NCBI GenBank assembly: GCA_002269645.1
Contig: NIVC01002109.1
Coordinates: forward strand, 78,398-142,397
Reading direction: 5' to 3'
DNA: 64,000 nucleotides
Source: Macrostomum lignano
Taxonomy: Eukaryota
Position 1 is the first letter of the stretch. The number at the start of each line of letters is the position of its first letter. Position numbers and translations under genes: made by a program. The notes under the pieces were generated by a model. That model saw nothing but the letters and a program-made list of their open reading frames with translations. It was not told where the DNA came from and made no database searches. Shown piece by piece: positions 1,264-51,700 of the stretch.

Positions 1264-19977
<18,714 letters not shown>

Positions 19978-30054: not shown

Positions 30055-31365
30055 CGAGGGTCACTCAGAAAGTTCTTAGCTTGAACACGAAAACAGCAAC
30101 AAATGAACTAAAAAAAGACTACAAGTGCTCAAAATACTCTCCACCGGCATTGATACAGGCTTGCATCCTGTGAAACCAGCTGTCGAAGCACTGCCGCCAA
30201 TCCTCATCCCGGAGCTCCTCGATGATGTTTTTAAACTCATTCACAGCTTCTTCCGGTGAAGAAAAGACCTGGCCCTTCAGAATCTCCTTGCACTTCGGAA
30301 ACAGAAAAAAGTCGCACGGTGCCAGGTCTGGACTGTAAGCAGGGTGAGTCATCAGCTGGACCCCACAGTCAGCCAGAAACTCCAGAGTTTGAGCCGCCGT
30401 GTGCGCGCTGGCGTTGTCGTGGTGCAGAAGCACCCCACGCATTCCGCACCTTGGGCGCCTCTGGCTCACAGCAGAAAAGACCTTGGGCAGGCAAACCGTT
30501 GTGTACCAGTCAGCGGTGACTGTCTGGCGATCTTCAAGTGAAACGGAAGCCACATGCCCAGTGCGCATGAAGAAACAGGCCACCATCTGCTTGCCGACAC
30601 TCCGGCTGCGTCGAAACTTGGTGGGGCTGTCCTCGTCTCCAAAGGTCCACATGGCTGACTGGCGCTTGCTTTCGGGGTCGTATTGATAAATCCAGGTCTC
30701 ATCGCCCGTGAGGATGTCCCAGATACGCCGGCTGGTCCCGGATTCGAATTTCTGCAGCATGAATCGGCACCAAGCCACCCTGGTGTCCTTCTGCACGTCA
30801 GACAGCTGATGGGGGATCCACCTGGAAGCCAGCTTCCGCACTCCAAGGTGTTCGTGCAGAATGGCGTGCACACTCCCCGATCCAATACCGATCTCCTGCT
30901 GGATCTGCTGGTAGGTCACTCGCCGGTCAGCGGCAATCATGCTGGACACAGCGCAGATATTTTCTGGAGTCACTGCGTCACAGGGTCTCCCGGATCGATG
31001 TTCATCTTCGAGGCTTTCTCGACCTCGGCGAAACTCAGCGAACCAGTTTTTGACGGTTGCGTATGAAGGACATACATGGGTGAAAACGTTCTGTAAAGTT
31101 TGATACGATTCGGCCGGCGACTTGCCTTGCTTGAAGTGCAGGTACATCATTGCTCTGAAGTCGCGATTTTCCAGCTTCATTGTTGAATTGAAGAACTCAG
31201 GGGGGTGAACTGACTTTAACTCGCTGCAGTGGACTCAAAAGTGGCTGCTTCTGTTTGAAATTTTTGCTGCGATACTTTTAAAAGTTGGTCTTTACCATAG
31301 ACAAATTTCATGCTTCTACGTCTCGTGGATCCTACTCAGGCTAAAGACTTTCTGAGTGACCCTCA
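30055..31365 (-). mobile_element. mariner (DD34D) transposon, 1311 bp
   Basis: About 30-bp TIRs, cgagggtcactcagaaagttcttagcttga vs reverse complement tgagggtcactcagaaagtctttagcctga. TA at 30053-30054; the right terminus has lost the final G and TA. Confidence 0.95.
30119..31180 (-). CDS. Intact mariner transposase, 353 aa
   Basis: N-terminal HTH, WIPHQL, TGDETW, LHHDNA and YSPDLAPCDF motifs; no stops or frameshifts. Confidence 0.95.
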   Translation of the reverse strand: MKLENRDFRAMMYLHFKQGKSPAESYQTLQNVFTHVCPSYATVKNWFAEFRRGRESLEDEHRSGRPCDAVTPENICAVSSMIAADRRVTYQQIQQEIGIGSGSVHAILHEHLGVRKLASRWIPHQLSDVQKDTRVAWCRFMLQKFESGTSRRIWDILTGDETWIYQYDPESKRQSAMWTFGDEDSPTKFRRSRSVGKQMVACFFMRTGHVASVSLEDRQTVTADWYTTVCLPKVFSAVSQRRPRCGMRGVLLHHDNASAHTAAQTLEFLADCGVQLMTHPAYSPDLAPCDFFLFPKCKEILKGQVFSSPEEAVNEFKNIIEELRDEDWRQCFDSWFHRMQACINAGGEYFEHL

Positions 31366-32312
31366 ACACAACTTTGGCATCTAAATCGTCGATCTCATGC
31401 TGCAGACTCTACTTGCTACGAGTATGGTTTCAGCTTCCTCCTCCAATCCAAGCAGGTCCAAGCGCTGGTTTCAAGGGATCAAAATAGTTAATGAATGTGA
31501 TATGGGGTCCCAGCAGGCCTCATAAGCTTATAAGTTCTCTGGTCTTTTGCGGGTATCTAAAAAAAGACAAGTGGCTCCTATGCAGTTAGTACTTTGACGC
31601 TAGTATAAATTTTCAAAACAGCAACTTCAGGTATCATCAATCTGAATTCGAGGGATAAGAGTATCGATTGTAAGGTGCTCGAATTCGAGGTCTATCTGGA
31701 TTCATTGCACGGGAGTCCAGCATTGTGACATTGTTCAAATCTGCTGCCTTTACGTTGTCGGCTTGAGCCATTTACCGCAATTTTTTCCCAATAGAGCCGC
31801 TTAATGAGAAGAGTGGATTCTTTGGCTTGGTGTTGCATATCTTTAGTGAAGTCCTTGCGCTTAATAGCGTCCAACAATGGTAGAGGATGTTTGTGAGAGC
31901 CTGACACTGAGTTCACCAGGCCGTCTTTAACTTCAACTTCATGCTCAGCAGTTGCAGCCAGTCAGTTGACACTTGAAGTATAAAACGATTTCTGAAAATG
32001 TAGCTTTTTGTTCCTTCAGATAAATTCAGCCCTTTTATGTGGCCAGCATTGAGCCATTGCGCTTAAAAGAAGTAAAGAGAATTAGGACAGTATTGATTAT
32101 AGATTATACAGATTATACAATCAACCGGTCCTTTTTAAAAAGCAAAAAATCTATGCAATCAATTAAACTTGGATTGCTTAATAAACCAAACAATAGTTAT
32201 TGGAACAGTCATAAAGCCGACACTGTTATGTCGAATATATATGCTGTTATAAATGCCGCAATAAGAAGTATATAAATAAACAAGAGATCATTAAATGAAT
32301 GCTTTTCAGTCT

Positions 32313-35300
32313 ATGGCCGCCTCAACCAATCGTTGCCCAGTAAAAGGCTGCGACTCTCGCGGTCACGTGAATCCCTCAATTAGCCAGCACTGCACCCTGA
32401 CAGCCTGTCCGGCTTATAGAGACCGCACTGGTCAACCCTGCGAGCCAGATTTAAGCCGGGTACCGTTGGAGAATCGCCAATCTTTGCAGCTATTTCGCGA
32501 GGCTCAAAATGCTTTGGCTAGCGACGCTGAACAGGATATGCTGGCCCATTGGCGCATGCTGCCCTCCGAGTATCAGGTGGAACAGGTGGGTGGCGAAAGC
32601 TTTTTATCTACGAGCGTATGGATACTATTCAAGTCTATTCACATTGTTGATCTATGTGTAGATATCTATTATCTAGATTTGTCTAACCGTCTATCTACAG
32701 ATGTCTCTATCCATTCATCTCTGGATGTCTAAATATTTAGATATATCTTTAGATTCTAGATATCTAATATCTATAGACGTCTATATCCCTTCCCTTATCT
32801 AATATCTATAGTCATCTCTATGATTTCCTGTCTGATATCTATAGGCGTCTATGCCCCTTCCGTTATCCAATATCTATAGGCGTCTATATCCCTCATGTGA
32901 TATCTTTAGGCGTCTATATCCCTCATATGTGATATCTTTAGGCGTCTATATCCCTCATATGTAATATCTATAGGCCTCTATATCCCTTCCTTATCTCGCC
33001 TCTTTCTAAGCTCGTAGCATCGCTTCACTTAATATGTTCTTTAACCCTGTCTAATTGTCCTCTTTGTCCCAATACTTTACGTGTCAGAATAAACACAGAA
33101 ATTAGTTTAATGTCAACAGCCTCTAAGGAAGGGAAGGGATATAAGGAAGGGATATAGGCCTCTATATCCCTTCCTTATCTCGCCTCTTTCTAAGCTCGTA
33201 GCATCGCTTCACTTAATATGTTCTTTAACCCTGTCTAATTGTCCTCTTTGTCCCAATACTTTACGTGTCAGAATAAACACAGAAATTAGTTTAATGTCAA
33301 CAAAAAATCGCAGGTTGCCATTGGCAACGCTCTACTAGACGTCTGGTACAAATCCTGCCTGCCGGCCGATCTAGCCTGCGTACCAGTGCTGCACTATTGC
33401 GAATTCTGTCTGGCCTGCTTCACCCAGCGACTGTCCTTGACGAGGCATTCGAGAAAGTGCGCCTGCCGGCATCCGCCCGGTGTGGAGGTCTATCGGGAAG
33501 GTTAGCTTTTGTGAATACTTGATGTCTGATGCTTAGAGTGTGACGGTTCCAAATATTTGGGGTGGCCGCGGTGGTTCAGCAACTGGGGATCTGGTAGGCT
33601 GGCCCAGCAACTGAGAATCTGGGAGGCTGGCCCAGCAACTGAAGATCTGGGAGGCTGGCCCAGCAACTGAAGATCTGGGAGGCTGGTCCAGCAACTGAAG
33701 ATCTGGGAGGCTAGCCCACCAACTGAGGATCTGGGAGGCTGGCTCAGCAACTGAGGATCTGGGAGGCTGGCCCAGTAACTGAGGATCTGGGAGGCTGGCC
33801 CAGCAACTGAGGATCTGGGAGGCTGGCTCAGCAACTGAGGATCTGGGAGGCTGGCCCAGTAACTGAGGATCTGGGAGGCTAGCCCAGCAACTGAGGATCT
33901 GGGAGGCTGGCTCAGCAACTGAGGATCTGGGAGGTTGGCCCAGCAACTGAGGATCTGGGAGGCTGGCAGCCCAGCAACTGAGGATCTGGGAGGCTGGCTC
34001 AGCAACTGAGGATCTGGGAGGCTGGCCTAGCAACTTGAGGATCTGTAATTGTTCAAAGAAAGTGAAACTAGAAATCCGAGTAGATTTGATGAGCCAAAAA
34101 ATAGGTTTGTATTGGTGGAATTGGTGAAGCCAAATATGAAAAAAAACTTTTGTTTCTGTGCTCAAGTTTGACTCTGACTCCAACTGCAATCATTTTTACA
34201 CCGTTTCTTTCTTGCACTGCTGCTGCCCACGCAGGCCAGGTGTCGCTGTTCGAAGTGGACGGCCGGCATTTCCGGGCCTACTGTCAGAGTCTCTGCCGGC
34301 TGGCGAAATTCTTCATTCGTCACAAAACTCTTGTTGAAGGTGTCGAAGCTTTTGTGTTCTACGTGCTGACAGAGGCTGACCAGACTGGGTGTCGCCTGAT
34401 TGGCTACTTCTCTAAGGAGAAGAGATCACTGCTTAATTACAATCTGTCCTGTCTGCTGGTGAGATTCTGCTTGATTTTGTAGTTTGCTTTTCTATTGGCC
34501 TTTGTGAGATTGCTCTAGTCTAGGTTGAGATTCTGAAATCTCTATTATCAAGGGTGAGATTCTGAAATTTCTATTATCTAGGGTGAGATTCTGAACTCTA
34601 ATATTTAGAGTAAGATTCTGAACTCTAATATCTAGGGTTAGATTCTGAAATCTCTATTATCTATGGTGAGATTCTGAAATCTCTATTATCTAGGGTGAGG
34701 TTTCTGAAATCTCTATTATCTAGGCTGAGATTCTGAAATCTCTATAATCAAGGCTGAGATGCTGAAATCTCTATTATCAAGGGTGAGATTCTGAAATCTA
34801 TATTATCTAGAGTGGGATTCTGAAATGTCTATTATCTAGGCTGAGATTCTGAAATCTCTATAATCTAGGGTGAGATTTTGAAATCTCTATTATCTAGGGT
34901 GAGATTCTGAAGTCTCTATAATCTAGGGTGAGATTTTGAAATCTCTATTATCTAGGATGAGATTCTGAAGTCTCTATTATCTAGGGTGAGATTCTTAAAT
35001 CTAACGTAACGTTCCTAAAATACAGTAAGAATTCTCTGAATCCCGATTGAGTTAGTGGAATTGCATTTCCAGGTATTCCCAAACCACATGCGCAAGGGCT
35101 TCGGCTTCCTACTGATCGACCTCAGCTACCGCATCAGCCAGCTGGAGGGCAGCGTCGGGTCGCCCGAGCGGCCGCTATCAGACGCCGGCCTGGCCGCCTA
35201 TCGCAAGTACTGGACTCGAGCCCTGCTCACCAGACTGCTAGAGCATCAGGGCACCGATATTAGCGTTCGCGATCTCAGCCAGGAGACCGGCATTCACGCT

Positions 35301-35489
35301 AACGATATCGTGAGCACGCTGCAGTCTCTCGAACTATTAAAGTACTGGCGCGGCGAGCACTTTATACTGGCTGATAAAAACCGGCTGAGACAGAAGCTGT
35401 CCGCCTGTCTGTCCACCTACATGAGGCTGGCCGACCCAGCCTGTCTGAGCTGGCGGCCGGCTGACTATCTGACTGGCGGGACAGCCTGA
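32313..35489 (+). CDS. KAT7: MYST histone acetyltransferase, KAT7/HBO1(chameau)-like; exons 32313-32585 (alternative donor after 32576), 33314-33500, 34235-34458, 35073-35489
   Basis: N-terminal CPxxGCDSxGH...H...CP (C2HC finger as in HBO1), LFREAQ, YCEFCL...[27 protein letters not shown] and GSPERPLSD. Splice phases are consistent, giving about 366 aa. Confidence 0.85.
33575..34045 (+). repeat. 28-bp minisatellite (ggcccagcaactgaggatctgggaggct) in KAT7 intron 2
   Basis: Direct reading; its reverse complement array lies at 42735-43130. Confidence 0.95.
34505..35000 (+). repeat. 29-bp minisatellite (gggtgagattctgaaatctctattatcta) in KAT7 intron 3
   Basis: Direct reading. Confidence 0.95.
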
Positions 35490-35514
35490 GCTGCCGTCTG
35501 CTCGTTTGGGACTG

Positions 35515-35877
35515 TGTGAGTGTCTGCGTCTGTCTGTGTGTGTCTGTTTGTGTCTGCGTCTGTCTGTGTGTGTCTGTTTGTGTCTGCGTGTGTCTGCGTC
35601 TGTCTGTGTGTGTCTGTCTGTGTGTCTGTCTGTGTGTGTCTGTGTCTGTGTCTGTCTGTGTGTGTCTGTCTGTGTGTGTCTGTCTGTCTGTGTGTCTGCC
35701 TGTGTGTCTGTCTGTGTGTGTGTGTCTGTGTCTGTCTGTGTGTGTCTGTGTCTGTCTGTGTCTATCTCTGTCTGTCTGTGTCTGTGTCTGTCCGTATGTC
35801 TGTCTGTCTGTCTGTCTATCTCTGTGTCTGTCTGTCTGTCTGTCTGTCTCTGTCTGTGTCTGTCTGTCTATCTCTGT

Positions 35878-35911
<34 letters not shown>

Positions 35912-35990
35912 CTGTGTCTGTCTGTCTGTTTGTCTGTCCATCAATGTCTTTGTGTCTGTTGTATTTATCCGTCTGTCTGCCTTTTTGTCT
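35515..35990. repeat. (TG/TCTG)n low-complexity tract after the KAT7 stop
   Basis: Direct reading. Confidence 0.95.
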
Positions 35991-36494
35991 TATTGACTGT
36001 CTTGTAATATCTTGTCGTTCTATTTATATCTGTAGGCTAACGTAACTGTTTATATTTAGCTACTTTAAATTTCTGTTAATATTGTGTTAGTGCGTTGTCT
36101 CAAAATCATGCTAAACTAAGTTCTGGTATCTTCTAATTTCTCATGTTTTTGTCAATTGTATGCACTGTACAAAAAGTAAAAAACAAATCGACATCAAACA
36201 TCAAAAACAAAATATTGATTGGCATTTCAGCTTCCTGTCCGATTTAGCTTTGTAAACATGAAAATTTACATGTTAAACTAGTCTCTTTCTGTGTGCTTAT
36301 TTTCATATATCTGGAAAACTAGGTTTGTTAATAGATAGATTTGATGAATTAGCATAGTCACATATAGTGATGAGGTGATTTTACTATGCCATACTGACAA
36401 TCTAGACTAGACTAGCTTTCCATACTATACACAGACTAGTACTAAATAACTATATGTAGACTAGCAATCCATGCCATTCATAGACTAGTTAATT

Positions 36495-36792
36495 AATAAT
36501 TGATTACACCTGTCCTAATGGCCAGATGTGCAACCGACAGCTCAGCCGCAGCTATTGCGTGGCGCATCTGAAGGCTGCGTACGGCTGTTCAGTCCAAGCA
36601 CTGGGGGGTCGCCACACACACCCTCAATTACCCCAGCTAATGCTGGCACCCATTTTACAGCTGGGTAAACTGAAGCAATGCAGAGTTAAGTGTCTTGCTC
36701 AAGGACACAAAGCGTTGTGCGTGGGTGGAGAATCGAACCCCAGACCTTTCAGTCGTGAGTTTGACGCTCTAACCACTAGGCTGCAGGCCCCC
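36495..36792 (-). mobile_element. tRNA-derived CORE-SINE (MIR-like)
   Basis: On the minus strand, A box TAGTGGTTAG and B box GGTTCGATTC, then tgtgtccttgagcaagacacttaac...cagtttacccagctgtaaaatggg, which resembles the MIR/CORE domain consensus as recalled. Confidence 0.8.
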
Positions 36793-36799
36793 TACAACC

Positions 36800-37517
36800 C
36801 CCATAGACTAGCAATCCATACTATTCATAGACTAGCAATCCATACTATTCATAGACTAGCAATCCATACTATTCATAGACTAGCAATCCATACTATTCAT
36901 AGACTAGCAATCCATACTATTCATAGACTAGCAATCCATACTATTCATAGACTAGCAATCCATACTATTCATAGACTAGCAATCCATACTATTCATAGAC
37001 TAGCAATCCATACTATTCATAGACTAGCAATCCATACTATTCATAGACTAGCAATCCATACTATTCATAGACTAGCAATCCATACTATTCATAGACTAGC
37101 AATCCAATTCATAGACTAGCAATCCATACTATTCATAGACTAGCAATCCATACTATTCATAGACTAGCAATCCAATTCATAGACTAGCAATCCATACTAT
37201 TCATAGACTAGCAATCCATACTATTCATAGACTAGCAATCCAATTCATAGACTAGTAATCCAATTCATAAACTAGCAATCCAATTCATAGACTATCAATC
37301 CATACTATTCATAGACTAGCAATCCATACTATTCATAGACTATCAATCCATACTATTCATAGAGTAGCAATCCAGTTCATAGACTAGCAATCCAATTCAT
37401 AGACTAGCAATCCAATTCATAGACTAGCAATCCAATTCATAGACTAGCAATCCAGTTCATAAACTAGCAATCCAATTCATAGACTAGCAATCCAATTCAT
37501 AGACTAGCAATCCAATT
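36800..37517. repeat. 24-bp and 18-bp minisatellite (tagactagcaatccatactattca)
   Basis: Direct reading; between KAT7 and SDHAF3. Confidence 0.95.
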
Positions 37518-37586
37518 AATTAAGTAGCAATATTTTCTATGAATTCAGCAATCCTTGAAACCAGCTATCATTTCCCCCATCCCCAG

Positions 37587-37997
37587 TTCGGTCCAAGTCA
37601 CACCAGTCGGGTTCGTCAGCTGTACAAGCTGATTTTACGCCTGCATCGCTCGTTGCCAGGCGATCTCCGTTCCCTTGGCGACCATTACGCTCGGGCGGAG
37701 TTTCGTCGGCATTTGAATTGCACCGAGCCGCAGGCTGCCGAGTTCATGCTGCAGTGGGCGGATTACGCCTCCGTGCTTAGCAGGCAGATTAGCGACAGTT
37801 TAAAAGAAGCCGACAGATCTCTAATTGGTTCCTCTGCTAATCTTCAGTCTCCCATAGCAACCGTTGCTAATGAAAATTCTACGAGTTCGTATGGCGTCTG
37901 TTTAAATCGACAACAATTGGATCATCTGGCCGACCATCAATTGGCTCAATTGTTTGAATTGTACAAGCATACTACTAATAGTACTAGTACTCACTGA
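37587..37997 (+). CDS. SDHAF3: Succinate dehydrogenase assembly factor 3 (ACN9, LYR family); the ORF is open from ATG 37539 but homology starts at the acceptor 37586
   Basis: SHTSRVRQLYKLILRLHRSLPGDLRSLGDHYARAEFRRH matches the SDHAF3 N-terminus ([38 protein letters not shown]). Confidence 0.9.
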   Translation, partial: FGPSHTSRVRQLYKLILRLHRSLPGDLRSLGDHYARAEFRRHLNCTEPQAAEFMLQWADYASVLSRQISDSLKEADRSLIGSSANLQSPIATVANENSTSSYGVCLNRQQLDHLADHQLAQLFELYKHTTNSTSTH

Positions 37998-38129
37998 TTG
38001 CGATGTTTTTTTCAGTGTCACAACTTGTTACATTAATTTTTTAGTTTGCATAATAATTTACTGGTTGCGACTCTTATTGTGTTGAGCATAGGAAACTAGA
38101 CAAATGTCGATTGCAGTCCCGGCAATCTT

Positions 38130-39080
38130 CACCCTCCTAAAGTTTTAATTCTGGAAATCTCACCCTCCTAAAGTTATAATTCTGGAAATCTCACCCTCCT
38201 AAAGTTATAATTCTGGAAATCTCACCCTCCTATAGTTATAATTCTGGAAATCTCACCCTCCTAAAGTTATAATTCTGGAAATCTCACCCTCCTAAAGTTA
38301 TAATTCTGGAAATCTCACCCTCCTAAAGTTATAATTCTGGAAATCTCAGCCCCTCTTAGATTTATGATTCTGGAAATCTCACCCTCCTATATTTATGATT
38401 CCGGAAATCTCAGCCCCTCTTAGATTTATGATTCTGGAAATCTCACCCTCCTAGATTTATGATTCCGGAATTTCACCCTCTCACATTGACGATTCCAGAA
38501 ATCTCACCCTTTTAGATTTATGATTCCAGAAATCTCACCCCTCTAGATTTCTGATTCCGCAAATCTCACCCTTCTAGATTTACGATTCCGGAAATCTCAC
38601 CCTTTTAGATTTATGACTCCGCAAATTTCACCCTCCTAGATTTATGATTCCGGAAATCTCACCCTCCTAGATTTATGATTCCGGAAATCTCACCCTCCTA
38701 GATTTATGGAAATCTCACCCTTCTAAATTTATGATTCCGGAAATCTCACCCTTCTAGATTTATGATTCCGGAAATCTCACCCTTCTAGATTTATGGAAAT
38801 CTCACCCTTCTAAATTTATGATTCCGGAAATCTCACCCTTCTAGATTTATGATTCCGGAAATCTCACCCTTCTAGATTTATGATTCCGGAAATCTCACCC
38901 TTCTAGATTTATGATTCCGGAAATCTCACCCTTCTAGATTTATGATTCTGGAAATCTCACCCTTCTAGATTTATGATTCCGGAAATCTCACCCTTCTAGA
39001 TTTATGATTCCGGAAATCCAATTCTTTGTAGATTTATGATTCTGGAAATCTCACCCTTCTAGATTTTTATTCCGGAAATC
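38130..39080. repeat. 31-bp minisatellite (gaaatctcacccttctagatttatgattccg)
   Basis: Direct reading; between SDHAF3 and ELP5. Confidence 0.95.
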
Positions 39081-39874
39081 TCCTACTACATCTAAGTCAC
39101 AAAATTACATGTTTCGCTTTCGTTGTTTAACGTCTCTTTCGATTTGCGGAGATAAATTCAAAGAGTCGCAGGTGGAGGTTTTGATTTCGATTTTTCGTTG
39201 CTAATATTCTTTATTTTAAACTTTTAAACTTATTATCTTTCGTTTAATATTGATGTAAAACTTTAGCAGTAGAAGCATTAGTTACTACTGGTAGTGGTGT
39301 GTTATTTTTACACATTACCGTATAAATTACACTTTATCGCATGTTGCTGTGTTTGATGAAGTGAAAGGATCAGTCCATGGTAGATCTAACTAAAATCTAT
39401 TTCGGTAACAACTATGGAACACTTTTTAAGCTTGAATCAATTATTATTAATGAATAATTTGTGATGTATAATTAAACTGCCTGCATACCCTTATTTACCT
39501 TTTGTAGGTCTTTTACTATAAATGGAAATAGAAATTCTGTTTTTTCACTGTGCGGTTTTTAAAAAATTAACAGCAGAAAATTGTGTAAAAATTTCTGTTG
39601 GCCTTATTAACGAATAAAAATATCCTAACATTTGCGACACTAGCTATTCTTTTAGAGGCACAAATCCAAATGGTTAAATTCGTCATATGTAAGTTATATA
39701 AGCTCAATTTGTTGTAAAGAAAACCAATTATAAATCTTATAAATTGATCCATTGCTCAACAATTAACATTATTAAACGTGTTTCTGCGATTTTTTTCATA
39801 GACTTCTATATTAAAATGCGTTTTGTAATTACTTATTGGTTTTGTTCTAAAAATAGTTTTCTGTTTGCTTGCTA

Positions 39875-40770
39875 CAAGCACCCACCACCCCACATAGATA
39901 GGCCATAGATATCCCCAACACCAAACACAGAACACCCACCACCCCACATAGATAAGCCATAGATATCCCCCAACCCCAAAACAACACCCACCACCCCACA
40001 TAGATAAGCCATAGATGGCCCCCGACCCCAAACGCAGAACACCCACCACCCCACATAGATAAGTCATAGATGGTCCCCGACCCCAAAACAACACCCACCA
40101 CCCCACATAGATAAGCCATAGATGGCCCCCGACCCCAAACGCAGAACACCCACCACCCCACATAGATAAGCCATAGATGGCCCCCGACCCCAAACGCAGA
40201 ACACCCACCACCCCACATAGATAAGTCATAGATGGTCCCCGACCCCAAAACAACACCCACCACCCCACATAGATAAGTCATAGATGGTGTCCGACCCAAA
40301 AAAAACACCCACCACCCACATAGATAAGCCATAGATGGCCCCCGACCCCAAACGCAGAACACCCACCACCCCACATAGATAAGTCATAGATATCCCCAAC
40401 ACCAAACACAGAACACTCACCACGCCACATAGATAAGCCATAGATGGCCCCGACCCCAAAACGCAGAACACCCACCACCCCACATAGATAAGTCATAGAT
40501 GGTCCCCGACCCCAAAACAACACCCACCACCCCACATAGATAAGTCATAGATGGTGTCCGACCCAAAAAAAACACCCACCACCCACATAGATAAGCCATA
40601 GATGGCCCCCGACCCCAAACGCAGAACACCCACCACCCCACATAGATAAGTCATAGATATCCCCAACACCAAACACAGAACACTCACCACGCCACATAGA
40701 TAAGCCATAGATGGCCCCCGACCCCAAACGCAGAACACCCACCACCTAACATAGATAAATCATAGATGAC
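39875..40770. repeat. ~55-bp minisatellite (cacccaccaccccacatagataagccatagatggcccccgaccccaaacgcagaa)
   Basis: Direct reading. Confidence 0.95.
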
Positions 40771-40894
40771 TTCAACTCCAAGCGCAAAACACCCTCCACC
40801 CCAAAAAGCTTAAGTCATAAATCTTGTGTCTGAGCTAAAATGCCAGATTATTTAACCCATAATATTTTCAAAGTCGGATTGTCTTCAATAATTT

Positions 40895-41869
40895 ATGCCT
40901 CAGGTAGTATTATCTGACAAGTCGGAAGCGCTGCTGGCGGCAGCTCTTAGGGAGCCGGGCATCGTGACCTGTTTTGCCCAATCTCATGGCCGCTTAGAAT
41001 GCCTAGCAGCTGCCCTATCCTCCCTAGCAACCGCTTCAGCGTCCTTAGCAACCGTCTCGCCGTCCAAGCGTCAAACATTGGCATTGCATCTCGGCATTGA
41101 TTCGCGCCTATCAGTTGCTATGCACTGCTCTGAGGAGCTTCAACTCATCAACTGTCTGGAGGCGGATCTGTCCAAGACTCGAACTCGCGTTCTTCGCGAA
41201 TCTTTAGCCGCCAGTCGTCAAGGTGGTTTCGTAGTCCTATATCCGATTGGTCCCCTGCTGCAGATTCTTCAAGTTGAACAGCTTATTCAATTAGCAACGC
41301 TATTGGTTGCTAAGCAATCTTGTACGGTTGCTATGGTCATTGATCAAAGCTCGATTTCCGATTCAGATGCCGATTTGTTGCTAAGCTCAGCTGCTACTGT
41401 CGTACACGCAGATAATAGTCAACAGCTAACAGACAAAGCCGGTTGCGGTGGCTTCCAATTAGAAGTTGAGCGCCGTCTCTTGAGCGGAAAAATGCCAACG
41501 GAACGATTGCGGTTGCTATGCAACGCTGGGCGCTATAATTTACCGGCTAGGCTGTTTCTGCGCAGAGATGAAGTCGCTGAAGTCGCCGAAGCAACAGCAG
41601 GGGAGGAGGATAAAGAGAAATCTTTGAGCACTTCCGCTTCCGGTCAATCGGGAGCTGCTGCCATGGACTCATTGACTTCATTCCGGCTAGGCCTAACTAC
41701 GCAGGAAGTTAAAGAACGCGCCGATGTTGTGCTGCCTCATCATCGGCCAATTGAATCTTCTACTCATGCTACTAATAATAGAAGAGAAGGAGGAGGCCGC
41801 ATAGATTACTGCCCGCAGCCTGAGGACGACTGGGATGACGAGGATCCCGATGACGATTTGGGAATCTGA
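40895..41869 (+). CDS. ELP5: Elongator complex protein 5, single exon, 324 aa
   Basis: C-terminal SFRLGLTTQEVKERADVVLPH and IDYCPQPEDDWDDEDPDDDLGI match the ELP5 signature ending in DPDDDL(D/G)I. Confidence 0.85.
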   Translation: MPQVVLSDKSEALLAAALREPGIVTCFAQSHGRLECLAAALSSLATASASLATVSPSKRQTLALHLGIDSRLSVAMHCSEELQLINCLEADLSKTRTRVLRESLAASRQGGFVVLYPIGPLLQILQVEQLIQLATLLVAKQSCTVAMVIDQSSISDSDADLLLSSAATVVHADNSQQLTDKAGCGGFQLEVERRLLSGKMPTERLRLLCNAGRYNLPARLFLRRDEVAEVAEATAGEEDKEKSLSTSASGQSGAAAMDSLTSFRLGLTTQEVKERADVVLPHHRPIESSTHATNNRREGGGRIDYCPQPEDDWDDEDPDDDLGI

Positions 41870-42339
41870 CAAGTTTTTTAACTGCATTGGCTTTGCTTTT
41901 GCTTTGATCTGACCTGTGTAAAGTAATCAAATATACTACTGGCATTGTAAGATTACAATTAGAAAATATACTTCCCACTGCATTCTTTATTGCCGTTTGG
42001 ACTTCCTATTTATCTTTGAATAATTCCATGTTGATTTAAGCTTAATATCTATTTAAATAATTCCCATCTGAGCTTCTCATTCAGCTGATAAATAATTCCC
42101 TTCTGAGCTTCTCATTCATCTGATGAATAATTTCCATCTGAGCTTCTCATTCATCTGATGAATAATTCCCATCTGAGCTTCTTAGTCTTAGAAATAATTC
42201 CCCTATAAGCAGCGGTATAATTTGATTTGCCAACCTATCAACTTATTTTAAAAATTAACGACTAAAAACGATTTCAGGTTAATATAAAAATCTTGCATTA
42301 TAATTGATTCACTTTTCACTGCTGGCCCGAAATGCCCGC

Positions 42340-44624
42340 ATGCGGTTAACGCTGACCAGGCTTGCTGCTGCCGCTGGGGGCACCGCAGGCGGCGGCGGCG
42401 GAGGCGGCGGCAATCGGTTGAAGCGGCTCCGTCAGCTGACCGGCCGGTCTCTGCTGGATTGCCGGCAGGCCCTGGCAGCCTGCGGTCACAACATTGACGC
42501 GGCTGTTGGCTGGTTAAAGAGAAGCTCGGCTTGCGGCATTTCTGCCCAGGAGCAGCCCGTCGCTGCTGGCGCTGACGATCGGCGGCGAGGCGAGAAAGCT
42601 GCGTTGAAAAGACGGCAAAAGCCGGCGAGGCACGGCCTGCTGGGCGTCTCTGTGCTGCAGCTGCCGCTGCGATTGCCTCAGCAAGCACGGTGAATACAAC
42701 TTTGTGTTGCAAGTGTTTTGTGTGTGTGTCTTGACTCTCAGTTGTTGGGCCAGCCTCCCAGATCCTCAGTTGCTGGGCCAGCCTCCCAGAGTGTCAATTG
42801 CTGGGCCACCAGCCTCCCAAATCCTCAGTTGCTGGGCCAGCCTTCCAGATCCTCAGTTGCTGGGCCAGCCTCCCAAATCCTCAGTTGCTGGGCCAGCCTC
42901 CCAGATCCTCAGTTGCTGGGCCAGCCTCCCAGAGTGTCAATTGCTGGGCCACCAGCCTCCCAAATCCTCAGTTGCTGGGCCAGGCTCCCAAATCCTCAGT
43001 TGCTGGACCAGCCTCCCAGATACTCAGTTGCTGGGCCACCAGCCTCCCAAATCCTCAGTTGCTGGGCCAGCCTCCCAAATCCTCAGTTGCTGGACCAGCC
43101 TTCCAGATTGTTAGTTGCTGGGCTACTCAGTTCAATAATTAACCTGCGCTCCACTTCCCCAGCCGCCAAGCTGCATCACCGCAGCAGTCAGCAGCCACAG
43201 CCGTAGTTGTTGAACTCCGCTGTCAAACAGAATTCGCGGCCCGCAATCAGCTGTTCCAGCTGCTCCTGTCCACCGCCTGCCAAGCCGTCATGACATCGGT
43301 GCTGGCCGCAGACTCCGGCTCGGGTGGTGCGCTGCCGCCAGCCATAATTCTGTCTCCAGATCGACTTTTATCCCTGACCGTGCCAGCTGCGGCTAGCCGG
43401 GATTCCCATCGCGAGTCTGCAGCGCCCGCATCATCGGTGCTGACCATTGCCGACGCTCTGGCGGAGACGGCTTCAAGGATTGGTGAACGATTGACGCTGA
43501 TCCGAGGATTGGCGTTCACGGCTCCGGCTGGGACCAAACTGGCCGTGTACTGCCACCCACTCGAGAGCTGGCATTTGCAGCACAAGCAGATTGCTAAGTG
43601 CGTGCTCGGGGGTTATTTGTGCCGTTCTATAGCTGGGATTTTATTCCCCTTTGTATGGCTGGGATTTTATTCCCCTTGATGTCTTTCATAGCTGGGATTT
43701 TATTCCCATTAGTGTCTCTCATAGCTGGGATTTTATTCCCCTTTTTATGGCTGGGATTTTATTCCCATTAGTGTCTCATAGCTGGGATTTTATTCCCCTT
43801 TGTATGGCTGGGATTTTATTTCCCTTGGTGTCTTTCATAGCTGGGTTTTATTCCCCTTAGTGTCTTTCATAGCTGGGATTTTATTCCCCTTAGTGTCTTT
43901 CATAGCTGGGATTTTATTCCCCTTAGTGTCTTTCATAGCTGGGTTTTATTCCCCTTAGTGTCTTTCATAGCTGGGTTTTATTTCCCTTAGTGTCTTTCAT
44001 AGCTGGGTTTTATTTCCCTTAGTGTCTTTCATAGCTGGGATTTTATTTCCCTTAGTGTCTTTCATAGCTGGCTTTTATTCCCCTAACTTACTTCCCCATC
44101 GGAGGGATCATTGCTAGATCAATAAACTGCCTAACATTGCTTACTAGAGTGCCCAAATCAACCCGTAGGCTATAAAATGTGCACCCAATGAACTCTTCAT
44201 CAGGCCCGGCAGCACGGCACCATCGGCCAGCATCGGCCAGGGCTCCCCTCTGCAGCAGCAGCAGCCGCCGCCGGCTCCAACAATATTCGCTCGCTACGCA
44301 GCCGGTGTAGCATATCAGCTGCTCGCCGCCGAGCAGAAGCACAGACAGCAGCAGCAGCAGGCGGCTGCAGAGGCTGCTAGACGACTCGCTCAGCACGTGG
44401 TCGGCATGCGGCCCAGGTGTGTCGGAATCGACCCCACCGCTGCCGCCACTAGCTCCGCCGGTTTCAACGACGAGCGCCGATTCGAACTTCAGCCATTCCT
44501 ATTGGACGAGACGGTCACGGCTGGGGAATGGGCAGCGTCGCGGGGTATTCGGGTTGTCGATTTTTTTCGCGCCCAATCGGCGCCGCCTTCGTCAATCGAC
44601 GTGTCGATTGGGAGCGTCGGCTAA
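42340..44624 (+). CDS. TSFM: Mitochondrial elongation factor Ts; exons 42340-42689, 43163-43597, 44204-44624 (1206 nt)
   Basis: LKRLRQLTGRSLLDCRQAL...AVGWL (UBA-like domain), VVVELRCQTEFAARN, IGERLTLIRG, LAQHVVGMRP and QPFLLD...VVDFFR. Both introns are phase 2 GT-AG and the frame closes. Confidence 0.88.
42735..43130 (-). repeat. 28-bp minisatellite (agcctcccagatcctcagttgctgggcc) in TSFM intron 1
   Basis: The unit is the exact reverse complement of the 33575-34045 unit. Confidence 0.95.
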
Positions 44625-45550
44625 AGCTGTTCGGACGGAAATGAGCGAATCTCTAGGGTTTTTTTTAATCCCGTTTTGAAATCCTATGGCTGATGGTTCC
44701 CCAGCTTTAATATCCCATGGTGACTAATAGGGTTTTGTTCCCCAACTCTGAAATCCCCATACCCAGCTATTGAGATTTTAGTTTATTCCCCAAGATCTGA
44801 AATCCCCATACCCAGCTATAGGGATTTTAGTTTATTCCCCAGCTCTGAAATCCCCATACCCAGATATAGGGATTTTAGTTTATTCCCCAGCTCTGAAATC
44901 CCCATACCCAGATATAGGGATTTTAGTTTATTCCCCAGCTCTGAAATCCCCATACCCAGCTATAGGGATTTTAGTTTATTCCCCAGCTCTGAAATCCCCA
45001 TACCCAGATATAGGGATTTTAGTTTATTCCCCAGCTCTGAAATCCCCATACCCAGATATAGGGATTTTAGTTTATTCCCCAGCTCTGAAATCCCCATACC
45101 CAGATATAGGGATTTTAGTTTATTCCCCAGCTCTGAAATCCCCATACCCAGCTATAGGGATTTTAGTTTATTCCCCAGCTCTGAAATCCCCATACCCAGC
45201 TATAGGGATTTTAGTTTATTCCCCAGCTCTGAAATCCCCATACCCAGCTATAGGGATTTTAGTTTATTCCCCAGCTCTGAAATCCCCATACCCAGCTATA
45301 GGGATTTTAGTTTATTCCCCAGCTCTGAAATCCCCATACCCAGCTATAGGGATTTTAGTTTATTCCCCAGCTCTGAAATCCCCATACCCAGCTATAGGGA
45401 TTTTAGTTTATTCCCCAGCTCTGAAATCCCCATACCCAGCTATAGGGATTTTAGTTTATTCCCCAGCTCTGAAATCCCCATACCCAGCTATAGGGATTTT
45501 AGTTTATTCCCCAGCTCTGAAATCCCCATACCCAGATATAGGGATTTTAT
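43630..45550. repeat. 33-bp array in TSFM intron 2 (43630-44085) and a related 48-bp array after TSFM (44735-45550)
   Basis: Both share gggatttta...ttattcccc. Confidence 0.92.
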
Positions 45551-46030
45551 CCACCAACTCTGGAATTCCCATGGTGACTCGGGTGACTGGGATTATGATT
45601 TCATATCGTCTTGCGAAACATTTTTCAACATTAGAATTACCACTTTTGATATTTATTCTAGTTAATAAATTAGACAAAAATTTTGGCAGCAATTTTTTTT
45701 ACTTTTTTAATGTACATGCAGCAATAGTTAATCCCTAGGCCGCGCTAGGCTAACTTGCCAGCAAATCAGGAGTCAATGCATAAACATACATTCACATCTA
45801 TTGTGTCATCGATTGCTTGTTTCTTAGATTGATCATTCTGATTGACATGATAATACATTTAGAATGCACATTTAGAACGTCTCGGACGTCTTCTGTTCTT
45901 TGCACGAACTATGGCTCGTATAAAAATTACGTGTTTGTTTTGAACCATTTTTGTTTCATGTTTTATTAATATTTAGAAAGCAACTTATTATTGATAAATA
46001 ATGAGACAGATAACAGAAAGTTAGTTAGAT

Positions 46031-48742: not shown

Positions 48743-51700
48743 TCACTTGGCACTGGCTGGAATCTTCGGCAGGCCGAATTCGTCCAGTTGAGCATCGCCC
48801 TGTAATTTTTTTATTGTTTATTGGTATTGACGTGACGTGCTACTCTGGTCTTTACCTACTCTGTAGTGTATTTAAATTCGCGATTTAATCACTCTAATCT
48901 CTAGCTAACTTTTACTCTAATCTCTAGCTACGAGCAACTATCACTCTTATCTTACTAAAATTCTTCACTGCTCCATTAAGCTGAACTCAAGCACTCACAG
49001 CAGCGGCGCTCTCAGCCCCGGGCTCCTTGCTGGGCACGCCGGGCGCATTCAGAGCCTCATCCAAATAAGAATCATCGCCAACTCCGATATCATCGCCAAG
49101 GGCTTCCAGCTCGGCTTCGAGCTCAGACTCGTCCACGTCTGGCATGCCGTAGCTGCGGCCCATGACCTCGTTGATCTCATTGGCCTGATCCATGAAATCC
49201 TCCAGATCGTCTTGCAGATCCTCAACCTTGTCCAAGTTGATACCTTTGTAGCTCTTCTTGAACTCTTTCACGCCGCCTTTCATAGCTTCAACGGTGGTCT
49301 TGGTGTCCTTCACCGTCTGGATGGCGAAGTTAGTCTGCTCCAGATTAAAGCTCTGCTGAGTCAGCTGGTCTCGCTGCTGCTCATAGGTTCGCTTCTGTTT
49401 GAGCACACGCAGCGCCTTCTGCTTAACAAGATTCTTAGAGGGGCCTTCGCGCATCTTCTTCATCTGGTCCCGGTATTTGGCCAGCTCAGCGTCTAGGCGG
49501 GCGATTTTCTTGTCCACGGATTCGCCGCGACTGTCAATCTGGCAATTGGGGGAATGAGAGTCCAATTAGATTGGACTGCAACTCGTTTGATATTAGGGTC
49601 TGAATCTATCTTTTTAGGATTAGACAAGCTTAGAATCCAATTCCCATCTCTATTTCCCTTTGTAGAACTGTTGACATGGAAATTCAGTGTATGCTTCCCT
49701 TGTATCAACCAATTTTTACACTTTTTTTCTGACTAACTTATTGGCTGCTCTTCTGCTACTTGCTTGTTTTTTATCCTCCTTTGTGTTTTTATCTTATCCA
49801 CTTGCATTGCTTTTTTCTTGCCTTTCTTATTTTTGTTTCATTATTTTCTAGTTAAGTTTAAACAATTACTTAGTGGCTGTGGCATGACGCGAATTCGCGA
49901 AAATAACGCGAATACGCGAATTCTATCACCCCGACGCGAAAATTGAGGGCAATGGAGAACGCGAAAAAAACAAAATGCTTCTTATAAGTTTTTCAAAAGA
50001 ATTGTGTTGTGTAATAGGCCTTCATACAAATGATTATTAAATAAATGACTATTGAATTCTTTATTGTGCAGTACTTAAATAAAATGAAGCTATCACCATG
50101 TTTTTTTATCGTCTTAATCAAACATTTTATTTTGTTAAATGTGTAAATTTTTAGGATTCGGCTAATAATAAATACCATGAGATAGACGTGTTATCTATGC
50201 AACTATGGATTTGTGAAAGCTAGTACAGTTTGCTTGTACCTTTCGTTTATCTTTTGACTCTTTCAACCATTCGACAACTCAGTCCAGCGCCTCCATGAGC
50301 CTAAGTAAAAGCCCGAGGTTACCGGTGGCTTGGAATGAAGACTGGCTGGAGCGCATTGATAACAATGGCGACAAGATTGGCATCTGGGCAAAGAAGCTCG
50401 ACAGCGAGGGTAGCACAGTGCGCTGCAACTGGTGTGCCAAAACTTTTGAAATCAAAAGTGGCCTGACCAACTTTAGAAGCCACGCAGAGGCTGCCAAACA
50501 AGCGCTGCTGAAGCCAGCTCAGGCAATACATTTGCTTTCACCACATTAGACACAAGCAGTACAATTGCTGATGCACGGGCAGCTGAGATCCGATGTGGTA
50601 CGAGACTCGTAATCAAGGCACGCAGCTTCGAATCAGAAGCAGATCTCGCTGAGGATATTGCTGCGATTTGTCCAGATTCAAAGATTCCTCCCCGTATGCA
50701 GCTCCATGAAAGCAAGATTGCTTACCTCCTTCGGGATGCATTGTTTCCATACATCAGAGAAGCAGTGCTGCAGGAGATCCGCGCAGCTGAATGGTTCTCG
50801 CTCCAAATCGATGAGGCTAATAAAGGATCCAAATACCTCGGAGTAGTTGCCCGCTTCCTGCCCAGCTCGTCTCTTGACGTTAAAGTGGTCTGCATCGACT
50901 TGTCTGAGTTAAAGTCCACAACAGCAGAGGCAATGGCGACTGCCGTCCGTCAGTCCATGTTGAAGTCTGGAATCAATAGCAACTACTGTCTCTCTATTAT
51001 GAGTGACAGTTGTAACGCTATGCGTGGTGCCAAGAGTGGTACAGTTGTTAGGCTAAAAACCGACGGGTTTCCTAACTTAATCGATCTAGGAGGCTGTTCC
51101 TTACACCATGTCGCTAACGTGGCTAGATACGCCTGTGGAGCTTCCGACCTTGGAGTGTCAGTAGAACGCTTGCTTAAGAAGATCTACGCCTTCTTTAAGA
51201 CAGTGCAGTCGGATGGTTTTGATGACGTTCTAGCTGACAGCTTCTGTGAGATAAAGAAGCTGGCATTCCTCCGACCTGTGGAGACCCGGTGGCTCCAAGT
51301 GCTGCCTGTCGTTGAACGAGTGCTCTATCTAGATGCACCGCTTGATAAGTTCTTTTCGGAACTGAACGTCAAGAGTAGGGACTCAGGGCCGCACGCTGGT
51401 ACCATAAAAAAGGCCCTGAGAGATCCAAAGACTGAGTTCTTTCTTCGCTTCATAGCAGAGGTTTTGAAGCCGCTTTAGCGTCTTGAGCTTCTCTTCCAGC
51501 AGGAAAGCTCCCAGCTCCACCACCTACACAGTCAAATGCTAGACTTAATGAAGCGCTGGTTGTTGCGATTTGTAGATTTGGCCGAACTTTCCAAGCGGCA
51601 TCTATGGAAAGTCAACTTGGATGATCTAGCTGTCTGGCTAGGGCCCTATAGCATTGGGATGGGTGAGCCAGCAAAGCCATTGTTTGTTGACATAACTGCT

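What the first reader, a model, noticed from the sequence alone, without database searches (positions are those of the whole stretch)
32300..44624. Putative four-gene spliced-leader operon KAT7-SDHAF3-ELP5-TSFM with minisatellite-filled spacers
Seen: four functionally unrelated housekeeping genes are co-oriented with gaps of about 2.1, 2.9 and 0.45 kb, the two larger gaps made mostly of tandem repeats. Each start has an unpaired acceptor-like site: ttttcag at 32309 (3 nt before ATG), ccccatccccag at 37586, tttatgcctcag at 40903 or ttttcaaag at 40873, and atttcag at 42277. Established: flatworms and nematodes resolve polycistronic pre-mRNA by SL trans-splicing. Inference: this is one transcription unit coupling chromatin, tRNA-modification and mitochondrial functions.
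Basis: partly seen in the sequence, partly recalled or inferred. Interest (0 to 1): 0.75.

Follow-up and report, generated by a model that had tools for sequence, protein, structure and literature searches.

The report
Known-type flatworm operon, repeat-swollen spacers
Four unrelated housekeeping genes lie head-to-tail in the flatworm Macrostomum lignano, separated by tandem-repeat-rich spacers; this layout is already documented genome-wide for spliced-leader operons in this species, so it is an ordinary, only partly proven example.

Summary
The window is the last 64 kb of Macrostomum lignano contig NIVC01002109.1 (Mlig_3_7 assembly). It carries, on the + strand, KAT7-like, SDHAF3-like, ELP5 and mitochondrial EF-Ts genes. 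The gaps are 2.1, 2.9 and 0.47 kb, and 54%, 66% and 27% of them is tandem repeat. All cited acceptor motifs are at the stated coordinates.

M. lignano has one spliced leader (SL) ending in AUG. About 15% of its genes are assigned to operons, and published work already shows that repeats inflate operon spacers.

For this locus:
- The GenBank SDHAF3 CDS is 5'-partial and begins exactly after the CAG at 37586, so the SL AUG would supply the start codon.
- ELP5 and EF-Ts share a transcriptional-unit name prefix.
- Two other copies of the locus keep gene order and a constant non-repeat spacer length, while total spacer length varies up to six-fold.

Against a single four-gene unit:
- KAT7 carries a different unit prefix.
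- The KAT7 and EF-Ts acceptors are each destroyed in one copy.
- Both of these genes have a conserved TATA consensus just upstream.
- "Unpaired" is not demonstrable, because each spacer has donor-like motifs.

No RNA reads could be examined. Functional coupling is unsupported.

The parts
32236..32276 (+). Cluster of four TATAWAWR matches (TATATAAA at 32269-32276), 37-77 nt upstream of the KAT7 ATG. Candidate core promoter of the first gene.
   Evidence: 4 of the window's 34 matches fall here. Conserved in all three locus copies. Promoter function is inferred.
32303..32309 (+). Acceptor-like ttttcag, 3 nt before the KAT7 ATG. The SL AUG would be in frame here.
   Evidence: Matches YTNCAG. The AG is changed to TG in copy L003, so it is probably dispensable.
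32313..35489 (+). KAT7-like MYST histone acetyltransferase gene, 4 exons (32313-32585, 33314-33500, 34235-34458, 35073-35489). Each of the three introns is 64-79% minisatellite.
   Evidence: Synonymous:nonsynonymous differences against copy L001 are 19:1. Not annotated in this contig's GenBank record.
35490..37586 (+). Spacer 1 (2097 bp). Contains (GTCT)n at 35521-35938, a tRNA-derived SINE-like element on the - strand at about 36583-36800, and a 24-bp minisatellite x32 at 36802-37514.
   Evidence: No AATAAA or ATTAAA in any copy.
37575..37586 (+). Acceptor ccccatccccag. Best-supported SL trans-splice site of the four.
   Evidence: The GenBank CDS (P0012, 136 aa, 'FGPSH...') starts at 37587, immediately after this AG, with no start codon. 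Conserved in all three copies. SL-AUG + TTC is in frame.
37587..37997 (+). SDHAF3-like LYR-motif protein, single exon. The start codon is probably donated by the SL.
   Evidence: The 16 codons between the upstream in-frame ATG at 37539 and the acceptor carry 2 substitutions, both amino-acid-changing, among the copies.
37998..40894 (+). Spacer 2 (2897 bp). Contains a 31-bp minisatellite x31 at 38119-39082, an AT-rich unique block at 39083-39873 (holds the only AATAAA/ATTAAA of the spacer, two TATA-like motifs and GTAAGT at 39689), and a 55-bp minisatellite x17 at 39874-40819.
40865..40903 (+). Two candidate ELP5 acceptors: ttttcaaag ending at 40873 and cctcag ending at 40903. The SL AUG is in frame at 40903.
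   Evidence: The 160 nt upstream of ELP5 differ at only 1 position among the three copies. The annotated CDS starts at 40898, between the two sites and after no AG. This is unexplained.
40895..41869 (+). ELP5 (Elongator subunit Iki1 family), single exon.
41870..42339 (+). Spacer 3 (470 bp). Contains a 35-bp minisatellite at 42054-42182 (3.7 copies here, about 41 in L003, about 52 in L001), acceptor-like atttcag ending at 42277, and TATAAAAA at 42283-42290.
   Evidence: The CAG at 42277 is ATG in L001, while the TATA motif is kept.
42340..44624 (+). Mitochondrial EF-Ts (TSFM) gene, 3 exons (42340-42689, 43163-43597, 44204-44624), with its own ATG. Identical to GenBank PAA60814.1, BOX15_Mlig015035g3.
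44625..45669 (+). Region 3' of the cluster. Contains a 48-bp minisatellite at 44734-45549 and the first AATAAA at 45664. Beyond it lies a convergent Snf7-family gene on the - strand (48990-49565).

Best explanation
The region is an ordinary Macrostomum lignano gene cluster of the kind already catalogued as SL-trans-splicing operons.

Most likely layout:
- KAT7 is the first gene, transcribed from the TATA-containing promoter directly upstream of its ATG.
- Transcription runs on through spacers that behave like introns: short unique flanks around a neutrally expanding minisatellite.
- The SDHAF3 and ELP5 mRNAs are released by 3'-end formation and addition of the single 35-nt M. lignano spliced leader. 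The terminal AUG of that leader supplies the SDHAF3 start codon, and possibly the ELP5 one.
- EF-Ts is the last cistron. It uses its own ATG and may also have its own promoter.

Shown: gene identities, layout, repeat content, three-copy conservation, and the annotated CDS boundaries. Inferred: co-transcription, use of each acceptor, and promoter positions. The grouping reflects shared housekeeping expression, not a functional pathway.
For: 1. Organism and published background. The window is M. lignano. The species has one SL, CGGTCTCTTACTGCGAAGACTCAATTTATTGCATG. About 30% of its genes are trans-spliced and about 15% are assigned to operons. Repeats inflate operon spacers, so operons are called on repeat-adjusted distances below 1 kb (PMC8629364).

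2. The non-repeat spacer lengths are 966, 987 and 341 bp, all under that threshold.

3. Three copies of the locus in the assembly keep gene order and strand. Total spacer length changes freely: spacer 3 is 470, 1772 and 2683 bp. The non-repeat part stays constant at 341, 348 and 322 bp. All copies are under purifying selection.

4. The GenBank SDHAF3 CDS begins exactly after the CAG at 37586 and has no start codon. This is as expected if the SL AUG initiates translation, a mechanism known for flatworm SLs (Cheng et al. 2006, as cited in PMC9851317).

5. ELP5 (Mlig015035g5) and EF-Ts (Mlig015035g3 and g4) share a name prefix. Prefixes denote clusters of RNA-seq-assembled transcriptional units, which are then cut into genes at SL and poly(A) signals (PMC5730564).

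6. Annotated CDSs of KAT7 (in the other two copies), SDHAF3 and ELP5 are all 5'-truncated.

7. No canonical poly(A) hexamer occurs in spacers 1 and 3 in any copy.

8. Each spacer ends with a minisatellite followed 72-95 nt later by the acceptor. The five true introns have the same geometry.
Against: - No SL-containing reads, poly(A) reads or 5'-end data could be examined.
- KAT7 has transcriptional-unit prefixes (Mlig017649, Mlig003136) different from ELP5 and EF-Ts.
- The prefix of the window's own SDHAF3 and ELP5 could not be read.
- Unit assembly allowed reads mapping to up to 1000 places. Repeat-derived reads could therefore bridge neighbouring genes artificially.
- The acceptors at 32309 and 42277 are each lost in one copy.
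- Conserved TATA consensus motifs precede KAT7 and EF-Ts. The AT-rich block in spacer 2 also has TATA-like motifs and AATAAA/ATTAAA signals. Internal promoters are therefore plausible.
- Non-repeat spacers of about 1 kb lie far from the roughly 100-bp mode of M. lignano operon spacers.
- The annotated ELP5 start at 40898 follows no AG.
Confidence: 0.55

Rival explanations
1. The four genes are independent transcription units that happen to be co-oriented. Each has its own promoter: the TATA cluster before KAT7, the unique AT-rich blocks of spacers 1 and 2, and the TATAAAAA before EF-Ts. SDHAF3 and ELP5 would be monocistronic trans-spliced genes whose outrons contain the minisatellites.
For: By the published count, 40% of trans-spliced M. 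lignano genes are assigned to operons, so the majority are not. TATA consensus motifs lie at plausible distances before KAT7 and EF-Ts and are conserved, while those genes' acceptors are lost in one copy each. TATA-like motifs at 39517 and 39695 and poly(A) hexamers occur in spacer 2. KAT7 has a separate unit prefix. Co-orientation of four genes has a chance probability of 1/8.
Against: ELP5 and EF-Ts share a transcriptional-unit prefix. The non-repeat spacer lengths fall under the published operon threshold and are held constant across three copies. No canonical poly(A) hexamer occurs in spacers 1 and 3.
Confidence: 0.3
2. Some of the acceptors are ordinary cis-splice acceptors of unannotated 5'-UTR exons, or of read-through chimeric transcripts. 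They would pair with the donor-like motifs in the spacers, for example 39689 GTAAGT with 40903, 41947 with 42277, or 35516 with 37586.
For: Conserved GT[AG]AG motifs exist upstream of every acceptor. Parasitic flatworms make extensive use of the same acceptors for cis- and trans-splicing (PMC12582326 abstract). The spacers have the same anatomy as the local introns.
Against: The donor motifs occur at about chance density. The annotated SDHAF3 and ELP5 CDSs are 5'-partial with no upstream exon assembled. With cis-splicing to 37586, SDHAF3 would still need a start codon from an upstream exon.
Confidence: 0.1

Closest known systems
Macrostomum lignano SL trans-splicing operons (Wudarski et al. 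2017, PMC5730564; Ustyantsev & Berezikov 2021, PMC8629364)
   Same: Same species and same assembly. Co-oriented, conserved housekeeping genes. The spacers are inflated by tandem repeats and transposons, yet are under 1 kb once repeats are subtracted. There is a single SL ending in AUG. Operons in this species hold 2-9 genes.
   Different: The two long spacers are near the upper limit of the criterion (about 1 kb against a mode of about 100 bp). Two of the four genes show signs of having their own promoters. Membership of this particular locus in the published catalogue could not be checked.
Caenorhabditis elegans SL2-type operons
   Same: A polycistronic precursor is resolved by 3'-end formation plus SL addition, and the grouped genes are functionally unrelated. 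(From established knowledge of C. elegans operons; searches cover spacing and SL types only.)
   Different: C. elegans has intercistronic regions of about 100 bp and a dedicated SL2. Here the spacers are 0.47-2.9 kb and the species has only one SL.
Flatworm SL 3'-terminal AUG used as initiator (Cheng et al. 2006, as cited in PMC9851317)
   Same: SDHAF3 has no genomic start codon downstream of its acceptor, and the SL AUG is in frame. The resulting N-terminus, MFGPSHTSRVRQLYK, matches the length of human SDHAF3 as I recall it. That comparison is from memory and is only a lead.
   Different: Shown experimentally in Schistosoma mansoni. Here it is inferred only from the annotated CDS boundary.
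Parasitic-flatworm operons and chimeric gene models (PMC12582326)
   Same: Operons of mostly two genes. Intergenic distances of up to several kb occur in chimeric models. The same acceptors are shared between cis- and trans-splicing.
   Different: A different flatworm lineage. Whether this gene order is conserved outside M. lignano could not be tested.

Membership tests
M. lignano SL-resolved operon (criteria of PMC8629364) | The organism uses SL trans-splicing and has operons | tested here: met
   The window is NIVC01002109.1 of M. lignano. Literature.
M. lignano SL-resolved operon (criteria of PMC8629364) | Adjacent genes on the same strand, not interrupted by an opposite-strand gene | tested here: met
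   Only a SINE-like element lies antisense in spacer 1.
M. lignano SL-resolved operon (criteria of PMC8629364) | Repeat-adjusted intergenic distance under 1 kb | tested here: met
   966, 987 and 341 bp after subtracting TRF repeats only, measured CDS to CDS. The first two are marginal.
M. lignano SL-resolved operon (criteria of PMC8629364) | Downstream genes carry the SL (SL reads at an acceptor upstream of the CDS) | tested here: inconclusive
   No reads were available. Indirect evidence: the SDHAF3 CDS starts exactly after the AG at 37586 and lacks an ATG. The ELP5 CDS is 5'-truncated near 40903. For EF-Ts nothing is known, and its acceptor is lost in L001.
M. lignano SL-resolved operon (criteria of PMC8629364) | One polycistronic precursor from a single promoter | not testable with these tools
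   Only a proxy is available: ELP5 and EF-Ts share unit prefix Mlig015035, while KAT7 has other prefixes. TATA motifs before KAT7 and EF-Ts suggest more than one promoter.
C. elegans-type SL2 operon | Intercistronic region of about 100 bp and a specialised downstream SL | tested here: not met
   The spacers are 470-2897 bp. M. lignano has a single SL.
KAT7/HBO1 subfamily of MYST acetyltransferases | N-terminal C2HC zinc finger + MYST zinc finger + MOZ_SAS catalytic domain, with KAT7 as the closest relative | tested here: met
   (KAT7 320 bits, KAT8 272 bits).
SDHAF3 (ACN9/LYRM10) | LYR-motif protein of the Complex1_LYR_2 family with SDHAF3-specific similarity | tested here: inconclusive
   Complex1_LYR_2 at E 3e-17. 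No named homologue was retrieved. The SDHAF3 assignment rests on similarity to the human sequence as recalled from memory.
ELP5 / Iki1 | Match to the Elong_Iki1 domain above Pfam's threshold | tested here: met
   25.2 bits against a cut-off of 22.5. The acidic C-terminal DDWDDEDPDDDL motif is shared with P0002.
Mitochondrial EF-Ts (TSFM) | EF_TS domain plus the N-terminal EF-Ts domain | tested here: met
   EF_TS at 40.2 bits against a cut-off of 27. EF-Ts_N is weak: 20.3 bits, below its cut-off of 33.2. UniRef names the identical protein as an EFTs/EF1B dimerisation-domain protein.

The most novel reading that the evidence does not exclude
All four genes are indeed made from one precursor that runs through kilobase-scale, hypervariable minisatellites. 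The three paralogous copies have spacers differing up to six-fold, and one copy each has lost the KAT7 or the EF-Ts acceptor. If so, they form a natural allelic series showing how much intercistronic length and acceptor loss an animal operon tolerates. The inverted 28-bp minisatellite arrays in the first and last genes' introns (33570-34045 and 42737-43125) could then pair within that single precursor.
Probability: 0.25. Interest if true: 0.35.

Novelty: new member of a known kind. Interest (0 to 1): 0.15.

Why it matters
It matters little beyond annotation. It would be one more instance among the roughly 10,000 M. lignano genes already assigned to operons. The locus does illustrate two known points cleanly: repeat expansion, not unique sequence, sets spacer length, and the SL can donate a start codon (SDHAF3). 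The three diverged copies could serve as a convenient test case for how spacer length and acceptor loss affect expression of downstream cistrons in a transgenesis-capable flatworm.

Tried and rejected
- The M. lignano SL sequence is not in the window. There are no Rfam families or tRNAs either, so there is no SL RNA gene here.
- An exact-protein look-up of the ELP5 ORF with its ATG found nothing. The annotated form lacks the M.
- Look-ups found these proteins on no transcriptome (Logan) contig: every M. lignano entry traces to a genome contig or a protein database. So no SL-junction cDNA could be retrieved.
- The only distant ELP5 hit, P0002, lies on a 5-kb contig from an unrelated sample, beside an SLC12 transporter. 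It says nothing about synteny.
- Full-text and supplement searches for Mlig015035, Mlig017649 and Mlig003136 found nothing.
- The SDHAF3 homology search and PDB searches for SDHAF3 and ELP5 returned nothing useful.
- Gene numbering (g3, g4, g5) could not be turned into a reliable gene order within one unit.
- Conservation of unique spacer segments against introns gave no clear signal. Divergence between copies is very uneven: 87-100%, with the EF-Ts region at 99.5%, possibly through gene conversion.
- The bacterial promoter/terminator scan was not used, as it is inappropriate for a eukaryote.
Full report
**What the sequence is.** The single-exon ELP5 ORF (40895-41869) is 98% identical to GenBank 'BOX15_Mlig015035g5 [Macrostomum lignano]'. 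An exact look-up of the SDHAF3-like product placed the window on contig NIVC01002109.1 of assembly GCA_002269645.1 (Mlig_3_7). Locus L002 is identical to window 27587-47997, and the window is the last 64,000 bases of that 142,397-bp contig, on the + strand.

**Checking the observation.** Pfam confirms all four gene identities:
- Gene 1 has zf-C2HC + zf-MYST + MOZ_SAS. Its best solved relative is KAT7 at 320 bits, against 272 for KAT8.
- Gene 2 is a Complex1_LYR_2 protein and is SDHAF3-like. The specific SDHAF3 call rests on my recollection of the human sequence.
- Gene 3 matches Elong_Iki1 (ELP5).
- Gene 4 matches EF_TS plus the mitochondrial EF-Ts N-terminal domain.

Exon models with canonical splice sites give uninterrupted ORFs. 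The EF-Ts model equals GenBank PAA60814.1 residue for residue. The gaps are 2097, 2897 and 470 bp, of which 54%, 66% and 27% is tandem repeat. Every acceptor-like motif lies at the stated coordinate.
- Only 32309 and 42277 match the published trans-splice motif [T/C]TNCAG, which occurs 1.9 times per kb on this strand.
- 'Unpaired' cannot be claimed. Conserved GT[AG]AG motifs lie upstream of each acceptor, at about chance density.
- Minisatellites are not a property of the spacers alone. All five introns of KAT7 and EF-Ts are 64-82% minisatellite, and the whole window is 27%.

**Surroundings.** Upstream on the + strand lies a rhodopsin-type GPCR gene (13.7-20 kb). A roughly 12-kb AT-rich gap follows, with no annotated gene. 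An intact mariner element (30056-31364, transposase on the - strand) sits about 950 bp before KAT7. Downstream, a Snf7-family gene on the - strand (48990-49565) converges on EF-Ts, and a hAT transposase remnant follows. The co-oriented run is therefore exactly these four genes.

**What is already published for this species.**
- M. lignano has a single 35-nt spliced leader ending in ATG.
- About 30% of genes are trans-spliced and about 15% are assigned to operons of two to nine genes.
- The authors state that repeats contribute substantially to intergenic distances in operons, and that RNA-seq transcriptional units tend to break in repeat-rich operon spacers. They therefore call operons on repeat-subtracted distances below 1 kb, where the distribution peaks near 100 bp.
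- The genome paper had already reported that about 7% of assembled transcripts are precursors with several trans-splice sites. These were cut into genes at SL and poly(A) peaks. Names share a prefix when the transcriptional units cluster at 95% identity.

**Evidence at this locus.**

*Annotation boundaries.* In the window's GenBank record:
- The SDHAF3 CDS is 136 aa ('FGPSH...'). It starts at 37587, the base after CAG 37584-86, and has no start codon. SL-AUG + TTC is in frame. This fits the known use of the flatworm SL AUG as initiator.
- The 16 codons between the upstream in-frame ATG (37539) and the acceptor carry two substitutions among the copies, both amino-acid-changing, which looks non-coding.
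- The ELP5 CDS is annotated from 40898 and lacks its M.
- KAT7 in the two other copies is annotated from one or two codons after its ATG.

These starts follow no AG, and I could not explain them.

*Transcriptional-unit names.* ELP5 of copy L001 is Mlig015035g5. EF-Ts is Mlig015035g4 in L001 and g3 in the window. Unrelated genes can share a prefix only if they were cut from one assembled unit. KAT7 carries other prefixes (Mlig017649g1, Mlig003136g1). This is suggestive but not conclusive, because read mapping allowed up to 1000 locations and repeat reads could bridge neighbouring genes.

*Three copies of the locus.* L001 (NIVC01000861.1) and L003 (NIVC01002702.1) carry the same four genes in the same order.

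| Spacer | Total length, window / L001 / L003 (bp) | Non-repeat length, window / L001 / L003 (bp) |
|---|---|---|
| 1 | 2097 / 1486 / 1423 | 966 / 868 / 877 |
| 2 | 2897 / 3607 / 2808 | 987 / 1050 / 1012 |
| 3 | 470 / 2683 / 1772 | 341 / 322 / 348 |

The 35-bp minisatellite of spacer 3 has 3.7, about 52 and about 41 copies. Coding sequences are under purifying selection, with synonymous:nonsynonymous counts of 19:1, 9:3 and 5:1. Repeat expansion is therefore neutral filler, exactly as published.

*Poly(A) signals.* No AATAAA or ATTAAA occurs in spacers 1 or 3 in any copy. In spacer 2 they occur only in the AT-rich unique block, more than 1.2 kb past the stop codon.

**Evidence against one four-gene unit.**
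- The KAT7 acceptor CAG is CTG in L003, and the EF-Ts acceptor CAG is ATG in L001. The SDHAF3 and ELP5 sites are intact in all copies.
- The same two genes have conserved TATA-box consensus motifs. A cluster at 32236-32276 lies 37-77 nt before the KAT7 ATG. If used, it would place a start site too close to 32309 to leave a functional outron. TATAAAAA at 42283-42290 lies 57 nt before the EF-Ts ATG. The motif occurs only 0.53 times per kb in the window.
- Spacer 2's unique block also contains TATA-like motifs and a GTAAGT.
- The two long spacers remain near 1 kb after repeat subtraction, far from the 100-bp mode.

**Most likely mechanism.**
- KAT7 is a promoter-proximal first gene and is probably not dependent on trans-splicing.
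- SDHAF3 and ELP5 are SL-dependent downstream cistrons. They are fed either by read-through from KAT7 (an operon) or by promoters in the unique spacer blocks (monocistronic outrons).
- EF-Ts is co-assembled with ELP5 but may also have its own promoter.

My probabilities: about 0.55 that at least part of the cluster is truly polycistronic, about 0.25 that all four genes share one precursor, about 0.3 that all four are independent units, and about 0.1 that unannotated cis-spliced 5' exons are the main explanation. The claim that the arrangement 'couples' chromatin, tRNA-modification and mitochondrial functions has no support. The literature read here reports only that trans-spliced and operon genes are mostly conserved genes.

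**Novelty and verdict.** The kind of feature is already known, and was described on this very assembly. This particular cluster is not mentioned in searchable text, so at best it is a new member of a known kind. Direct RNA evidence exists publicly (SL reads, T-fill poly(A) reads and RAMPAGE tracks) but could not be reached with these tools. Interest is low.

Noticed in passing
window 30056-31364: Intact mariner/Mos1-type transposon with 29-nt terminal inverted repeats and an uninterrupted 353-aa transposase ORF on the - strand (30119-31180). It is present only in this copy of the locus and is absent at the homologous point of L001 and L003, so it is a recent insertion about 950 bp upstream of KAT7.
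   Followed up: yes
window 33570-34045 and 42737-43125: The 28-bp minisatellite in KAT7 intron 2 and the one in EF-Ts intron 1 are inverted copies of the same family, about 90% complementary over up to 212 nt. The inverted pair is kept in all three copies of the locus. The arrays could pair if both lay on one precursor RNA.
   Followed up: partly
window ~36583-36800 (- strand): tRNA-derived SINE-like element with A- and B-box-like motifs in spacer 1. It is present at 93% identity in all three locus copies and is not recognised by ARAGORN or Rfam.
   Followed up: partly
window 42054-42182; L001 10923-12858; L003 19341-20764: The 35-bp minisatellite between ELP5 and EF-Ts has 3.7, about 52 and about 41 copies in the three locus copies. 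This changes the spacer from 0.47 to 2.7 kb while the unique flanks stay constant.
   Followed up: yes
window 40898; L003 10001; L001 1708 and 10001: GenBank 5'-partial CDS starts for ELP5 (window) and KAT7 (L003, L001) fall just after the genomic ATG and not after an AG. ELP5 of L001 starts after an internal CTCTGAG in mid-ORF. These may be imprecise transcript ends or a cryptic internal SL site. Unresolved.
   Followed up: partly
window 42278-42342: The EF-Ts leader contains upstream AUGs whichever 5' end is used. An SL AUG at 42277 would open a 10-codon uORF, and a genomic out-of-frame ATG at 42332 overlaps the main start at 42340.
   Followed up: no
window 13778-19974 (+), 48990-49565 (-), 50477-52574 (+): Neighbouring genes: a multi-exon rhodopsin-family GPCR, a Snf7-family (ESCRT-III, CHMP-like) gene convergent with EF-Ts, and a hAT transposase remnant with its C-terminal dimerisation domain.
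   Followed up: partly
window vs L001 and L003: Divergence between locus copies is very uneven. The window and L003 are 95-100% identical. L001 is 87-96% identical in most non-coding DNA, but 99.5% across EF-Ts including an intron, and 100% in the 75 bp before ELP5. This suggests gene conversion or local constraint.
   Followed up: no
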